Shown piece after piece: positions 37,001 through 46,000 of a DNA stretch of 64,000 nucleotides. The translations under genes and the position numbers were made by a program. Where the stretch lies: contig NW_027361728.1 in assembly GCF_039654945.1 (NCBI RefSeq), positions 58,590,001 to 58,654,000 of the forward strand, in the 5' to 3' direction. The DNA comes from Dendrobates tinctorius. Taxonomy: Eukaryota. Position 1 is the stretch's first letter; each line of letters starts with the position of its first letter. The notes beneath the pieces were generated by a model. It searched no databases and was not told the origin of the DNA. It saw only the letters and a program-made list of their open reading frames with translations.

Positions 37001-40000
37001 ATCCTGTTTTCTCGTTCGCCTTATTGGGGGACACAAGAGACCTTGGGACGTCCCAAAGCAGTCCCTGGGGTGGGAAACAAACTTCCATCAGGCCAGCGGA
37101 CTCACCACCGCGGCCTGCAGAATCCGTCTACCTAGGCTGGCGTCCGCCGAAGCGTAGGTGTGGACTCTGTAGAATTTCACAAACGTGTGAACCGATGACC
37201 ATGTTGCAGCTTTGCAAAGCTGCAGTGCGGAAGCTCTGTGGCGCACCGCCCAGGAGGCACCCACTGCTCGAGTAGAGTGGGCCCTGATACCCGGAGGGGC
37301 TCCGCGACGCTTAACACGGTAGGCTCCCAGGATAGCCGATCTGATCCAGCGAGCAATGGTGGCTTTTGACGCCGGGTGACCTTTCCGCGCTCCATCAGGG
37401 ATAATGAAAAGAGACTCTGTCTTTCGCAAGGAAGTCGTCCTAGACAGGTAGACTCTTACCGCCCTAACCAGGTCCAGCTTGTTCGAGGACCGCTCTCGGG
37501 GATGAGTTGGATTCGGACAAAAGGACGGGAGCACGATATCCTCGTTGAGGTGAAACGAGGACACCACCTTCAGAAGGAACGAGGGCGGAGGCCGCAGAAC
37601 TACCTTATCCTGGTGGAGAACCAGAAAGGGAGAGCGGCACGAAAGAGCTGCCAATTCCGACACGCGCCGGACGGAGGTGATGGCCACCAGAAAGGCTACC
37701 TTCCAAGAAAGGAGAGAAAGGGAAATATCCCTGAGGGGTTCAAAGGGCGGACCTTGCAGAACCTCAAGAACCAGATTAAGATCCCATGGATCCACGGGCG
37801 CCCGGTACGGCGGGACCGTGTGAGCCACGCCCTGAAGAAAGGTCTTAACCTGAGGACGGGAAGCCAACGTTTTCTGAAACAGAATGGACAGCGCCGAAAC
37901 TTGACCCTTCAGGGAACTGAGGGCAAGCCCCGCATCCAATCCTGCCTGAAGAAACGCTAGGACTGAAGGGAGCGAAAAGGACATGGGCGCGACGTCATTG
38001 GTCTCACACCAAGTGAAATAGGCCTTCCAAGTACGGTAGTAAATCTTGGAAGATGATGGCTTTCTGGCTCGGATCATGGTCTGAATTACGTGGTCGGAAA
38101 ATCCTGCTCGTTTCAGAACCTCGGTCTCAACAGCCACGCCGTTAAATTGAGCGGCCGAGAATTGGGGTGGCAAATCGGACCCTGAGACAGCAGATCTGTT
38201 CTGTCTGGAAGCTTCCAGGGGGCGTCCGCGAGAAGGTTGACAATGTCCGCGAACCAAGACCTTCTGGGCCAATTCGGGGCAATGAGAATGACCGGAAGTC
38301 CTTCTGCCTTGATCTTCTTCAACAGCTTGGGAAGAAGAGGCAGAGGAGGGAACAGGTAGGGAAGTTCGAACTGGGACCAAGGAACGGCCAGGGCGTCGGC
38401 GCCCACTGCCAGAGGGTCCCGAGACCTGGACACGAATTGTGGGACTTTCCTGTTGAGGCGAGACGCCATGAGGTCTACATCCGGAGTTCCCCACCGAAGG
38501 CAGAGCAGATGAAACACTTCCGGATGTAGGGACCATTCTCCCGCCGCGAGACCCTTGCGGCTGAGAAAATCGGCGGCCCAGTTGTCTACGCCGGGAATGT
38601 GAACCGCGGAAATTGTCGGGACGGAAATCTCCGCCCAACGAAGAATCTTGGACACCTCCGCCAGGGCTGAAACACTCCGTGTTCCCCCTTGGCGGTTGAC
38701 ATATGCCACCGCTGTGGCGTTGTCTGTCTGAATCCGTACCGGCAGTCCCTTGAGGAGCCTTTCCCAGTGGACCAGAGCAAGATGGATCGCTCGAATCTCC
38801 AGAACGTTGATCGGTAGCGCTGATTCCCGATCCGACCATCGATCCTGAACAGTGTGGTTGCGGAACACAGCACCCCAACCGAGGAGACTGGCATCTGTGG
38901 TTACTATCTGCCAGTGAATGGGAAGGAAGGATCGACCCGATAGAATGAGAGGTGACGACAACCACCAGTTGAGAGACCGCTTGATCCGGTAAGAAAGATG
39001 GACAGGGCGATCCAGGGACCGAGGCGACCTGTTCCACTTCGACAGAATGGCCTGCTGGAGAGGCCTGGCGTGAAATTGGGCAAAGGGAACTGCCTCTATC
39101 GCCGCGACCATCTTTCCCAGGACCCTCATGGCTGTACGGAGGGATGGGAATCGCGAGGTCTGCAGCGATCGTACTTCCTGCTGCAGAGAGAGAATCTTTT
39201 CTTGTGGGAGAAAGACCCTTGACCGACGAGTGTCGAACAGAAGACCTAGAAAGACCAGGCGTTGGGTAGGAATCAGACAGGACTTTTTCCTGTTGACGAT
39301 CCACCCGAAATTGGAAAGAGTGTCCAGGACGATTGACAAACTTTGGTGAGCCTGTTGGAATGAGGGAGCCTTGATCAGAATATCGTCTAGGTACGGGAAA
39401 AGAACGAGGCCTCTGACTCTCAACAAAGCCATCAACGCAGCCATGATCTTCGTGAAGACTCTGGGAGCGGTGGCAAGACCGAAGGGCAGTGCGACAAACT
39501 GGTAGTGGTGCTGTCGAATCGCAAAGCGCAGGAACTTCTGATGTCCGGAGAAAATTGGAACATGTAAATAGGCATCTTGGATGTCTATTGAGCACATGAA
39601 TTCCTGCTCCTCCATGGAGGCGATGACCGAGCGAAGCGACTCCATGCGGAAGTGGCGAAGGCGGACCCTCTTGTTGAGCAGCTTGAGATCCAAGATGGGT
39701 CGAACTGCGCCGTCTTTTTTCGGCACTACAAACAGGTTCGAGTAGAACCCCGTGAAGCGCTCCGATTCGGGAACGGGCACAATCACCCCGGAACTGAGGA
39801 GAGCGGCGATAGCTGTAGAGAACCCCGGGATCAAAGCTGGATCCTTTGGAGGCCGGGATTCGAAGAAACGATCCCGTGGGAGAGAGACGAACTCTATCTT
39901 GTATCCTGAGGATACGACCTCCCTGACCCAGGCGTCCTCCACGGCGGCCAGCCAAACGTCCCTGAAGGAAAGAAGTCGACCTCCCAATTGGAAAGGCCCT

Positions 40001-43000: not shown

Positions 43001-46000
43001 TTTTGCTTAGTGTCGCAAGGAGGCACACCTTTTTTCTTCCGTTTTTTTCCTTTTTTCACGGAAATACAGATGAAGAAAAGTGGGTCTCCAGCGAGACTCC
43101 CGGCATGGCTCCCTCCTCGGTCCCCTATTAGGGGTACCCGGTTGAGGTGGGTTTTTTTTTCCCCCATGTCGCTCCCTCCCCAGTCCCTCGGGTCCTGGTT
43201 CGAGGTCGAGACCCCCCTCCTTCCCCAACACCCTTAAGGGGTCTGGGTTGAGGTCGAGGCGAGGATGAAGACCCCCTGACGGTGACAGACGCACCCTCCC
43301 TAATCCCCCGCAGGGGGTATTAGGTTGAGACGCCTCAGGTAGGGTCGGAGATCAGGCAGCATTCCGCAGCTTCCAGGGACCCCAGGCCGGCTGAGGGATC
43401 CTGTGGGGGCCGGGGGAGGGTGCGGACTGGATGGCACAGCAGAAACAGGGCTTTTGCTGCGTCCCTGTCTCTGCAGCAGCAGCGGCTCCATAGCCCTTCA
43501 GGGGCCCCCCATACAAAAACCGCTACCCCTGCTACCCCCACCGCTATCCAGTCGACCGTTCTGGGGGGGTCTGGTACAAATCCGCCCCCCCCCCCCGGAC
43601 TACCGCGCCGCTCTGGAGCCCTCCTGGGCATCAGGCTTCAAATTTAGACCGCGGCTTCGGCCTAGCTGAAGCCGCCGCCTTTTCCCCGCCCCCCGGCCCG
43701 CCCCCCGGATGACCAATATGACACACTGGAGTGTCATAGAAGGGGTGGATTGAGGCAGAAAGGGCGCGTTTTTACACAGCCCAGCGCGCCCTTTTCAGCT
43801 CTCCGCCCCCTCCTCCCTCTCCTCAGAGCCCCGGTGGCCATTTTTTCTGGATGAGATCCAGGAGAGAAGCATCACAGCGGTCTCCGGGGGGCACAGAACT
43901 TGGATCTGTCGGCGCTGGACCTAGGGGCACACCGGTGGGGTAAGCTCACAGCTGGGTTCTCATTACTCAGCTGTGAATCTATACTTCCTATAAGGCTTTC
44001 TGTGGGTTCCCTCTGCGTAGCCACCCCTGTACGATCCCTTATAGCCAGCCTCTGTGCACTATGCCGGGCTCAAGGAAGAGAACCAGGCAGGAATGTTTCT
44101 ATGCATTCTGCACAGCCTGCAAAGCCACGCTCCCTAGTGGCAGCACGTATCCGCACTGCCGGGTCTGCATCCAGAACTCTGGGTCAGAACCCCAGGGAGT
44201 CCCTACTGACGCTTCAGTGTCACAGGCCACGCCGGAATGGGCAACTCAGATGTCTCAGTCTATGTCACAGTCCATAGACAACCTAACTGCTACATTGCTG
44301 CAAGCTCTGCAGAGTCGGACCCCGGCTATGGACGGTACACAGCAAACGGACAGCTTGTCTCAGGAACATGCTGCTTCTGACTCTCACAGACGTAAGCGGA
44401 CTCACAGGTCTCGATCACCTGAGTCGCACTATAGCACAAGGTCGTTCCCCTCTAGGGAGAGACAGCGTCATTCCAGGTCTCCTGGGCAGTCCCCTGCCAC
44501 AGACAGACAGTGCAATTTACCACAGGGATCCCCCACCACAGAAGACCCCCGCCCCAGGTCGCCCTCCAGGGATCACCTTAGTGAGGCACAGGATTCGGAG
44601 GGCATCTGTGACTCCGACTCAGATAATGAAACGGTCAGGTCCGTGGTACCTTCTCCCCCTAGCAATACAGCGCTAGTTGAGGACATAATTTCTTCTATTC
44701 ATCGGGTGCTAAAAATTCCAGAGTCGCCCCCGGAAGTCCCAAAACATAGGATTTGCTTCGAAAGTGTTCAAAAACCACCTAAGGTCTTCCCTAATCACGA
44801 TGAGTTTGAGAAAATACTTACCAAACAGTTTGCGCAGCCTGACAAAAAATTCGCTAATCGCAAATATCTGGAAGCGAAGTACCCTTTCCCACAGGAAGAC
44901 ACCAAACAATGGGCAGATCCACCTGAAGTGGACCCTCCGGTTTCTAGGCTAGCAGCGCAGACTTTACTCTCTCTGCCGGATAGCTCAACCCTCAGGGACG
45001 CAGCAGACCGGCAAGTAGAATGCATGGCTCGTTCTATTTTCGAAGCGGCAGGCGCCTCTCTGGGCCCTGCGTTTGCTTCAGTTTGGGCAGCCAAGGCCAT
45101 CCTAGCTTGGGCCAAAAGACTACAGGAGGGTCTTCAGGCTTCAAATCCTGAACTCTCGGACCAAGCGGTCCAGATGGCAGTGGTAGCAGACTACATGATT
45201 CATGCAGCCCTGGATTCCGCCAGAGGTGTAGCGGGAATAGCATCAAACGCCATCACGATCCGACGCATCCTCTGGCTGCGAGAATGGAAAGCGGATGCGG
45301 CCTCAAAGAAGTCCCTCACGCGACTTCCGTATTCTACTGATAGACTTTTCGGCGAAAAGTTGGACACCATGATAGCCAATGCCACCGGGGGTAAGAGTAC
45401 CTCTCTCCCTCAACTAAAACCGAAACGCACGTTCAAACGAAGAAACCAGACGCGATTCCGATCCTTTCGGAATTCCTCGGGCTGGTCCGTTTCGCGCCCA
45501 GTGCAAAACCGCAACCGTTCTCCACGCAGAGACAACCCACGGACGCAGCAGCGACCGGACAGGGCTTGGCAGTCGAAAGCAGGCAAGCGAAACCCAAGGG
45601 AGGAAAACCTCAGAACTTCACTTCATCATGACTCGAGACCTCCGGAAGACACCCCACCAGTAGGCGGCCGACTTTTACTCTTTCAGCAAGTCTGGCTGCC
45701 TATTACAGAAGACAGGTGGGTCAGGGAAATAGTGTCTTCCGGATACAAGATAGAGTTCACTTCCGTTCCACCGAACCGGTTCTTCCTTTCTGTTCCTCCA
45801 ACACCACCAGAAAAGGCTCGTGTCTTCCACCAAGCGGTTTCCTCTCTCCTTCAAATCAGGAGTTGTGGTGCCGGTTCCCGCGAACGAGAGATTCCGAGGA
45901 TTCTACTCAAATTTGTTTGTAGTCCCCAAGAAAGGAGGCGGCGTCCGACCCATACTGGACCTAAAACAGCTCAACAATTACGTACGGGTCCGTCATTTCC

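What the first reader, a model, noticed from the sequence alone, without database searches (positions are those of the whole stretch)
39950..45690. Conserved 14-nt gag-stop motif in two divergent DIRS elements: candidate dual recoding switch (readthrough to recombinase, +1 shift to RT)
Seen: at the gag stop, A reads ACTTCAGCA-TGA-CT (40030-40017, minus) and B reads ACTTCATCA-TGA-CT (45620-45633). That is 13/14 identical although the flanking sequence does not align. In both, the tyrosine-recombinase ORF is in the gag frame and open from the codon right after this UGA for about 970 codons (B needs the extra A near 45853 removed), overlapping RT for over 600 codons without a stop. The RT ORF is in the +1 frame (CAT GAC...), and its conserved N-terminus (GGRL...W...GYKIEF...VPKK...RPILDL) has no upstream AUG. 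No ATG occurs in any frame for about 370 nt after the stop in either element. Established: UGA-C (especially UGA-CUA) is the leakiest stop context; shifty-stop +1 frameshifts occur at UGA (antizyme, RF2); ORF overlap is known in DIRS. Inference: one stop codon gives three products, Gag, Gag-YR by readthrough and Gag-RT by +1 shift. I cannot confirm this is undescribed.
Basis: partly seen in the sequence, partly recalled or inferred. Interest (0 to 1): 0.88.

Follow-up and report, generated by a model that had tools for sequence, protein, structure and literature searches.

The report
One gag stop, three reading frames
Two broken frog DIRS retrotransposons share the end of their gag gene, a UGA stop placed so that reading through it leads to the recombinase and shifting +1 leads to reverse transcriptase. 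The same layout recurs in 23 distant DIRS lineages, so this stop is a strong but unproven candidate for a three-way translational switch.

Summary
**Observation: partly confirmed.**
- The 14-mer is at the stated coordinates in both copies. It matches at 13/14 positions, against 28-37% identity in the flanks.
- Both copies are defective DIRS1-like elements lying head to head.
- In A the TGA ends the gag C-terminal frame. The same frame stays open for 976 codons to the recombinase (YR) stop, and RT is in +1 with no AUG.
- In B as it stands, gag runs in the RT frame. The TGA is not its stop.

- I examined 23 DIRS lineages from other samples, with RT 35-81% identical.
- ORF1 ends in TGA in 22 and in TAG in 1.
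- RT is always in the +1 frame.
- Wherever RT is unbroken, the ORF1 frame has no stop across all of it. Synonymous-codon shuffles give 15-30 stops.
- The codon-position pattern of substitutions switches from the gag frame to the RT frame at the stop.
- The base after the stop is C in 14/23.

**Weak points.**
- The 14-mer itself is conserved only as Ser-Ala-UGA, and only in frog families.
- There is no family-wide RNA structure after the stop.
- The +1 shift site is not identified.
- Nothing here is experimental.

I found no paper proposing this, but the key early DIRS papers are not held. The scan has at least 8 similar first-reader notes elsewhere in this genome.

The parts
36665..42694 (-). 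DIRS1-like element A, whole and defective. ITRs are at 42555-42692 and 36701-36838. The internal complementary region is at about 36946-37035.
   Evidence: Inverted repeats of 138 nt at 95%. ICR arms are 100% complementary to both termini.
40338..41312 (-). A gag, N-terminal piece from the ATG at 41312. The frame break to the C-terminal piece is at about 40395-40411.
   Evidence: tblastn of frog gag proteins switches frame at 40395-40411.
40019..40513 (-). A gag, C-terminal piece ending ...Thr-Ser-Ala-TGA (TGA at 40021-40019).
   Evidence: Pfam LAP2alpha at 2.9e-5.
40017..40030 (-). The 14-mer in A: ACT TCA GCA TGA CT. The stop context is GCA_UGA_CUA.
38113..40206 (-). A RT/RNase H/MT open frame, +1 relative to the TGA. 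Conserved from GGRL at about 39984. No ATG before codon 125 after the stop.
   Evidence: Pfam RVT_1 at 7e-22 and RT_RNaseH.
37088..40018 (-). A 0-frame ORF of 976 codons, starting at the codon after the TGA. About 635 codons overprint RT and are Ser/Gly/Arg/Pro-rich. The last 340 or so codons are the tyrosine recombinase.
   Evidence: The YR profile hits Cre at 7e-5 and the R..K..HxxR..W..Y residues are invariant. Weak Phage_integrase hit.
42853..49029 (+). DIRS1-like element B, whole and defective. ITRs are at 42866-43003 and 48844-48981. The ICR is at 48613-48712.
   Evidence: Inverted repeats of 138 nt at 100%. ICR arms are 100% and 98% complementary to the termini.
44061..48554 (+). B uninterrupted 1497-codon ORF. 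It comprises gag, then the RT N-terminus (GGRLL..GYKIEF), then, after the break at about 45850-45855, the overprinting frame and YR.
45620..45633 (+). The 14-mer in B: ACT TCA TCA TGA CT (TGA at 45629-45631). This frame is open only about 79 codons upstream and 96 codons downstream in this copy.
45754..47535 (+). B RT/RNase H/MT frame downstream of the break.
   Evidence: Pfam RVT_1, RT_RNaseH and Dam.

Best explanation
The shared 14-mer is the last three codons and the stop of ORF1 (gag) in two defective DIRS1-like tyrosine-recombinase retrotransposons.

**Layout in this element type**
- gag and the recombinase lie in one reading frame of about 1500-1670 codons, interrupted by a single stop that is almost always UGA.
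- The roughly 635 codons between that stop and the recombinase domain overprint the RT/RNase H/methyltransferase ORF.
- The RT ORF sits in the +1 frame and has no AUG before its conserved N-terminus.

**Most likely working**
- Most ribosomes terminate at the UGA and make Gag.
- A minority read the UGA as sense and continue to a Gag-linker-recombinase fusion.
- Another minority shift +1 at or within a few codons of the UGA and make Gag-RT/RH/MT.
- The element has no protease, so two separate Gag fusions would bring both enzymes to Gag assemblies in sub-stoichiometric amounts.

**Shown:** the ORF geometry, its conservation, selection against stops in the 0 frame, the change of constrained frame at the stop, and the bias to UGA and to C at +4.

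**Inferred:** that readthrough and the +1 shift actually occur, where exactly the shift happens, and their rates.

The two window copies are both broken and cannot do this themselves.
For: **Anatomy of A and B:**

**Independent lineages.** Sources are Logan, ENA and JGI contigs (L001-L008, L055) and 46 metagenome loci.
- In 23 lineages, ORF1 ends in TGA 22 times and in TAG once (P = 5e-10 against 1/3).
- RT is +1 in all 23 lineages.
- The 0 frame is open from the next codon for 970-1058 codons, to the YR stop or the contig end. Its first in-frame ATG is at codon 394-672 in the five families examined closely. In several metagenome lineages a 0-frame ATG comes much earlier, at codon 15-45.

**Selection tests.**
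- Synonymous-codon shuffles of RT give 15-30 stops in the 0 frame, with a minimum of 6-19. Zero are observed in every lineage with a full-length RT. The third frame matches expectation.
- In five close pairs from three lineage groups, substitutions within 45 nt before the stop peak at gag codon position 3 (0.43 against 0.24 and 0.11). From +37 onward they peak at RT position 3 (0.46 against 0.26 and 0.18).
- GGRL begins 9-12 codons after the stop in seven frog families (A, B, L001, L002, L004, L007, L055), with no RT-frame ATG in between.

**Stop context.**
- C at +4 in 14/23 (P = 0.001). TGA-CTN occurs 8 times, TGA-CGN 4 times and TAG-CGG once.
- A's GCA_UGA_CUA equals the OPRL1 signal in P-site codon, stop and the next three bases. 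In OPRL1 the GCA P-site codon is worth about 3-fold.
- Weak stops are known to feed readthrough and the ±1 frames in competition.
- L011 has gag-to-YR as one 1626-codon ORF with no stop. The fusion frame is therefore readable as such.
Against: - No experiment supports any of this.
- Both window copies are broken, and B's gag is not in the TGA frame.
- The P-site codon is not conserved outside frog families. +4 is not C in 9/23 lineages.
- There is no family-wide excess of RNA structure after the stop: mean z is about -1, as elsewhere in the element. RNAalifold gives a weak consensus with no covariation support. Rfam finds nothing.
- Without a stimulator, +1 shifting at a stop would be inefficient.
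- A roughly 635-residue low-complexity linker in Gag-YR is odd.
- Some lineages do have an RT-frame ATG near the stop (L008, L012, L013, L026).
- One DIRS type has an RT ATG overlapping the gag stop, judged from gene coordinates only.
- The lineages share ancestry, so the P values overstate independence.
Confidence: 0.45

Rival explanations
1. Readthrough only. The UGA is leaky and gives Gag-linker-YR. RT is made some other way, not by a +1 shift at the stop. Possible routes are a shift elsewhere, non-AUG or AUG internal initiation, reinitiation, or a spliced mRNA.
For: - The signals found (UGA, C at +4, CUN/CGN, GCA P-site codon) are readthrough-type signals.
- No shift-prone P-site codon and no stimulator is conserved.
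- Several lineages carry an RT-frame ATG within -125 to +70 nt of the stop.
- The residue before GGRL is often encoded by GTG, TTG or CTG.
Against: - RT is +1 in all 23 lineages.
- Its conserved N-terminus starts 9-12 codons after the stop in frog families, with no ATG in between.
- Gag-frame constraint runs right up to the stop, and RT-frame constraint starts within about 40 nt after it.
- Internal initiation about 1.5 kb into an mRNA would need an IRES.
- B has GTA before GGRL, which is not a near-cognate start codon.
Confidence: 0.22
2. No recoding. The 14-mer is conserved coding sequence (gag C-terminus and start of the RT frame) inherited from a common ancestor. RT and YR are translated from subgenomic or spliced RNAs or by unknown routes, and the long overprinting frame is kept open for another reason.
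For: - In frog families the Ser codon before Ala varies at its third base, so the amino acid rather than the RNA is what is conserved.
- The motif is not conserved outside them.
- No structure was found.
- The long YR/pol overlap is described in the literature without any recoding claim.
Against: - Zero stops against 15-30 expected over about 630-730 codons, starting exactly at the gag stop, with no 0-frame ATG for 394-672 codons in the five families examined closely. This is hard to explain unless ribosomes enter that frame at the stop.
- UGA in 22/23 and the +4 C bias are not needed by this view.
Confidence: 0.18
3. Frameshift only. Gag-RT is made by a +1 shift. YR is reached from the RT frame by a -1 shift, or by its own start near the end of RT. 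The frame after the UGA is not translated from the stop.
For: YR is -1 relative to RT. Conserved Met codons lie near the start of the YR domain, at codons 626-679.
Against: - Those Met codons are inside the conserved YR N-terminal domain.
- A late entry would not require about 630 stop-free codons upstream.
- L011 and B both carry continuous gag-to-YR frames.
Confidence: 0.08
4. UGA is decoded as selenocysteine.
For: UGA is almost exclusive, in 22/23 lineages.
Against: One lineage uses TAG and one has no stop at all. No SECIS or other Rfam match was found in A or B at E up to 1.
Confidence: 0.01

Closest known systems
DIRS1-like retrotransposons with 'long ORF overlap' (e.g. XtDIRS2/3 of Xenopus tropicalis; Piednoel et al. 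2011, PMC3266345)
   Same: ORF order is gag, YR, pol. The YR ORF overlaps pol extensively and its catalytic domain is in the non-overlapping 3' end. ITRs and an ICR are present, as are an RT/RH/MT pol and the roughly 6 kb size.
   Different: The held papers describe the overlap but give no way of translating YR and pol. Shown here: the YR frame is the gag frame, it is separated from gag by one UGA, and it is kept stop-free by selection, with RT always at +1.
Programmed stop-codon readthrough: OPRL1-type GCA_UGA_CUAG (Loughran et al. 2022, PMC9841425). From my own knowledge: gammaretrovirus gag-UAG-pol, and plant and alphavirus UGA-CGG / UGA-CUA contexts.
   Same: A leaky UGA followed by C, often CUN or CGN. 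A has GCA_UGA_CUA. The in-frame downstream ORF is long and conserved. The logic is that of a retroelement Gag-enzyme fusion.
   Different: The base after CUA in A is U, not G. No 3' pseudoknot was found. The readthrough product would cross about 635 codons that overprint another gene.
+1 frameshifting at a stop or slow codon: antizyme UCC_UGA (PMC9841425) and, from my own knowledge, Ty3 GCG_AGU_U
   Same: The downstream ORF is in +1, lacks a start, and begins at a UGA. L013 and L025 read UCC_UGA_C. Frog families have an Ala codon in the P site, as Ty3 does. DIRS RT is Ty3/gypsy-related.
   Different: There is no conserved P-site codon and no conserved 3' pseudoknot or 5' element. The shift site is not mapped.
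Competition of termination, readthrough and ±1 frameshifting at weak stops (Loughran et al. 2022)
   Same: One weak stop feeds several frames at once.
   Different: In that study the minor frames are by-products. Here both alternative frames carry essential genes. I know of no described gene in which one stop serves two functional recoding events; that statement rests on my own knowledge and on negative text searches.

Membership tests
DIRS1-like retrotransposon (DIRS order) | RT + RNase H + Dam-like methyltransferase pol, with no protease and no DDE integrase | tested here: met
   Pfam finds RVT_1, RT_RNaseH and Dam (Dam weak at 2e-5, in B). No protease or integrase hit in any ORF.
DIRS1-like retrotransposon (DIRS order) | Tyrosine recombinase with the catalytic R..K..HxxR..H/W..Y residues | tested here: met
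   A profile of 10 YR domains hits Cre at 7e-5. R149, K181, H278, R281, W304 and Y314 are invariant. Single sequences reach only E of 0.02-0.04 to Phage_integrase.
DIRS1-like retrotransposon (DIRS order) | Inverted terminal repeats plus an internal region complementary to both termini | tested here: met
   A has 138-nt ITRs at 95% and an ICR at 36946-37035. B has 138-nt ITRs at 100% and an ICR at 48613-48712.
DIRS1-like retrotransposon (DIRS order) | An ORF1 (gag-like) upstream, and a long YR/pol ORF overlap in part of the family | tested here: met
   The gag is LAP2alpha-like. The overlap is 635 codons in A.
Programmed stop-codon readthrough | Conserved leaky stop context (UGA, C at +4, CUA/CGG-type) | tested here: inconclusive
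   UGA in 22/23 and C at +4 in 14/23 (P = 0.001). CUN or CGN follows in 13/23. Nine lineages have A, G or T at +4.
Programmed stop-codon readthrough | An in-frame ORF after the stop that is maintained by selection | tested here: met
   Zero stops against 15-30 expected. Entry by ATG is excluded for 394-672 codons in the five families examined closely; several metagenome lineages have an earlier 0-frame ATG.
Programmed stop-codon readthrough | Measured readthrough product | not testable with these tools
   Needs reporters, ribosome profiling or mass spectrometry.
Antizyme-type +1 frameshift at a stop | +1 ORF without its own start, entered at a UGA | tested here: met
   RT is +1 in 23/23. No RT-frame ATG lies between the stop and GGRL in frog families. 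The constrained frame switches at the stop.
Antizyme-type +1 frameshift at a stop | Conserved shift-site P codon (UCC) and a 3' pseudoknot or 5' stimulator | tested here: not met
   The P codon varies. UCC occurs only in L013 and L025. There is no family-wide structure, though strong hairpins lie 6-8 nt after the UGA in L001, L004 and L007, and L055 folds as strongly at that place (z = -4.4). Pseudoknots were not searched for.

The most novel reading that the evidence does not exclude
In DIRS1-like retrotransposons with the long ORF overlap, a single leaky UGA at the end of gag is a three-way decoding switch conserved across at least 23 lineages. Termination gives Gag. Readthrough gives Gag-linker-recombinase. 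A +1 shift at the same stop gives Gag-RT/RH/MT. This would also explain why the recombinase ORF overprints the whole of pol.
Probability: 0.4. Interest if true: 0.8.

Novelty: new variant of a known kind. Interest (0 to 1): 0.64.

Why it matters
How DIRS elements translate their three overlapping ORFs has not been explained in any paper I could read. The long YR/pol overlap is described only as a curiosity.

If one stop codon sets the ratio of three products, it would be the first natural case I know of in which readthrough and +1 frameshifting at the same stop both yield essential proteins. It would also give a reason for a roughly 635-codon overprinted frame.

The idea is directly testable with short three-frame reporters. 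It bears on how weak stops partition ribosomes among frames.

It also matters for annotation. Gene callers split or mis-join these ORFs in frog genomes, as seen in the chimeric models.

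Tried and rejected
- **Fetching DNA of frog-genome copies.** Five look-ups returned no DNA because the sample files were too large: three large NCBI frog assemblies and two ENA samples. 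I used Logan, ENA, JGI and metagenome contigs instead.
- **RT frame translated upstream of the stop.** Its openness there (62-128 codons) is what gag's codon usage gives by chance (P = 0.11-0.99). This gives no evidence for an upstream shift site.
- **Reinitiation at the ATG overlapping the stop (cATGa).** It is in the +2 frame and opens only 10-41 codons.
- **Conserved 3' structure.** RNAalifold on six frog families gives -7.2 kcal/mol with a positive covariation term. Family-wide z-scores after the stop are no different from elsewhere. Hairpins exist only in some lineages.
- **Rfam.** No recoding element or SECIS was found.
- **Selenocysteine.** Rejected; see the rivals.
- **Settling B's ancestral gag frame.** Its nearest protein relatives (P0001, P0009) align ambiguously over the low-complexity tail. 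No B-family DNA was obtainable.
- **Literature.** Six text searches and seven papers gave no statement on DIRS recoding. Goodwin & Poulter 2001 and Gao et al. 2003 are not held, and I did not look for Poulter & Goodwin 2005. Prior description cannot be excluded.

Full report
**What is there.**
The finding spans the inner halves of two DIRS1-like tyrosine-recombinase retrotransposons. They lie head to head, 158 bp apart.
- Element A (36665-42694, minus strand) has 138-nt inverted terminal repeats at 95% identity. Its internal region (about 36946-37035) is complementary to both termini.
- Element B (42853-49029, plus strand) has 138-nt ITRs at 100% identity and an internal complementary region at 48613-48712.
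- Pfam finds a LAP2alpha-like gag, RVT_1, RT_RNaseH and a weak Dam-like methyltransferase.
- The recombinase is recognised weakly from single sequences. A profile of ten such domains recognises it clearly: Cre at 7e-5, with R, K, HxxR, W and Y invariant.
- The nearest protein relatives are from dendrobatid frogs.

**Observation check.**
Ungapped flanks are 37% and 28% identical.
- In A, the TGA at 40021-40019 ends the frame that carries the gag C-terminus. That frame continues open for 976 codons to the recombinase stop at 37088.
- In A, the RT frame is +1, open over 40206-38113, with its first ATG 125 codons after the stop.
- Neither copy has an ATG in any frame for about 372 nt after the stop (P about 0.008 each). 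An ATG does overlap the stop in the +2 frame.
- Both copies are broken. A's gag changes frame near 40395-40411. B has a one-base break near 45850-45855.
One ORF of 1497 codons therefore runs from the gag ATG through the RT N-terminus into the recombinase frame.
- B's TGA-frame tail resembles other gag C-termini. An upstream break in B is therefore likely, but I could not settle it.

**Comparison set.**
- Large frog assemblies could not be fetched.
- I obtained eight frog-like or related copies from Logan, ENA and JGI contigs: L001-L008 and L055.
- I obtained 46 more distant DIRS loci from metagenome contigs, using an RT alignment.
- Clustering by RT identity leaves 23 lineages with a recognisable ORF1 stop. 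Nearest-neighbour identity is 47-81%, and identity to A is 35-64%.
- ORF1 stops in the metagenome loci were called blind to the 0 frame. The rule was the longest ORF of at least 120 codons in another frame that ends near the RT start.

**Architecture.**
- In all 23 lineages RT is in the +1 frame relative to the ORF1 stop. The stop is TGA in 22 and TAG in 1.
- The ORF1 frame reopens at the very next codon. It runs 970-1058 codons to the recombinase stop wherever the contig allows (L002, L008, L010, L012, L013, L015, L018, L020) or to the contig end.
- In the five families examined closely, the first in-frame ATG of that frame is 394-672 codons after the stop. Several metagenome lineages have an earlier 0-frame ATG, at codon 15-45.
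- L011 has no stop at all: gag to recombinase is one ORF of 1626 codons. Its RT frame opens just after an A7 run.
- Four to five loci are too decayed to score.
- One DIRS type has an RT ATG overlapping the gag stop, judged from gene coordinates only.

**Is the overprinting frame kept open by selection?**
Yes. I shuffled synonymous codons within RT, keeping protein and codon usage fixed.
- The shuffles give 15-30 stops in the 0 frame, with minima of 6-19.
- Zero stops are observed in every lineage with a full-length RT.
- The third frame carries the expected number of stops.
- The RT frame's openness upstream of the stop is at chance level.

**Where does the decoded frame change?**
I used five close pairs from three lineage groups.
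- In the 45 nt before the stop, substitutions peak at gag codon position 3 (0.43 against 0.24 and 0.11).
- From +37 onward they peak at RT position 3 (0.46 against 0.26 and 0.18).
- The first 36 nt after the stop are the most conserved and show no single-frame signature.
- The sample is small and three of the pairs share sequences. Even so, it places the frame change within about 40 nt of the stop.
- In seven frog families (A, B, L001, L002, L004, L007, L055) the conserved RT N-terminus (GGRL) starts 9-12 codons after the stop, with no RT-frame ATG in between.

**The motif itself.**
- In frog families the conserved core is TCN GCA/GCC TGA, that is Ser-Ala-stop. B has TCA TCA TGA.
- The Ser codon varies at its third base. 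This points to the gag C-terminus and/or the P-site codon rather than to a 14-nt RNA signal.
- Outside frog families the P-site codon is free. CAA occurs six times and UCC twice, and nine other codons occur once each (AAA, AAG, CAG, CAC, TAC, GTG, CGC, GTT, ACC).
- C at +4 is enriched (14/23, P = 0.001). CUN or CGN follows the stop in 13 lineages.
- A's GCA_UGA_CUA matches the OPRL1 readthrough signal in P-site codon, stop and the next three bases. In OPRL1 the P-site GCA contributes about 3-fold (PMC9841425).
- That paper also shows that weak stops feed readthrough and the ±1 frames in competition.

**Stimulators.**
- No family-wide RNA structure follows the stop.
- Strong GC hairpins start 6-8 nt after the UGA in L001, L004 and L007. 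Their 3' arm is the GGRL codons. L055 folds as strongly at that place (z = -4.4). In A the equivalent stem is weak and 23 nt away. In B it is poor.
- Rfam finds nothing.

**Mechanism and rivals.**
- The geometry is what a Gag / Gag-YR (readthrough) / Gag-RT (+1 shift) scheme needs. The stop-free 0 frame beginning exactly at the stop is hard to explain otherwise.
- The readthrough half is the better supported, by the context biases, the open frame and L011.
- The +1 half rests on frame constancy, the missing AUG and the switch of constraint. It lacks a recognisable shift site or stimulator.
- The rivals and my weights are in the report sections.

**Novelty.**
- The ORF order and the long overlap are known (PMC3266345, PMC6681497).
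- No held paper proposes how YR and pol are translated.
- The early DIRS papers are not held, so priority is uncertain.
- The scan holds 12 notes matching 'DIRS gag stop' in this genome. The 8 listed are first-reader notes of the same idea on other pieces, and no check on any of them was shown.

All translations used the copies as they stand.

Noticed in passing
window 44061-48554 (+): B's two frame changes compensate each other. The result is one uninterrupted 1497-codon ORF from the gag ATG to the recombinase stop that bypasses the TGA and drops most of RT. B's ITRs are 100% identical, so it may be a recently inserted copy mobilised in trans.
   Followed up: partly
window 42555-43003: A and B lie head to head with their 5' termini 158 bp apart. 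The two left termini are 78% complementary to each other (42642-42692 against 42853-42903).
   Followed up: no
L011:1446-6326: This DIRS lineage has no stop between gag and the recombinase (1626 codons). The +1 RT frame opens right after an A7 run (about 3325-3335), which is a possible slippery site.
   Followed up: partly
L013:397-411, L025:315-329: ORF1 ends UCC_UGA_C, the same P-site codon and stop as the antizyme +1 shift site.
   Followed up: no
L001:1950-1981, L004:1914-1948, L007:2742-2764: GC-rich hairpins of 8-13 bp start 6-8 nt after the UGA, with the GGRL codons as their 3' arm. L055 folds as strongly at the same place (z = -4.4). This spacing is typical of recoding stimulators, but the hairpins are absent or weak in A, B and L002.
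   Followed up: partly
contig of P0079 (no DNA held): Another DIRS type has ORF1 at 2543-3523 and RT at 3520-5748. The RT start therefore overlaps the ORF1 stop by 4 nt (ATGA-like). Its integrase is a separate ORF.
   Followed up: no
window 39646-40018 and 45632-46002: No ATG occurs in any frame for about 372 nt after the stop in either copy, where about 4.5-4.8 are expected. This depletion is not shared by L002, L004 or L007.
   Followed up: partly
window 44061-45628, 40022-40513: The frog DIRS gag matches Pfam LAP2alpha (PF11560). Many frog gene models are chimeras of DIRS pieces with host genes.
   Followed up: no
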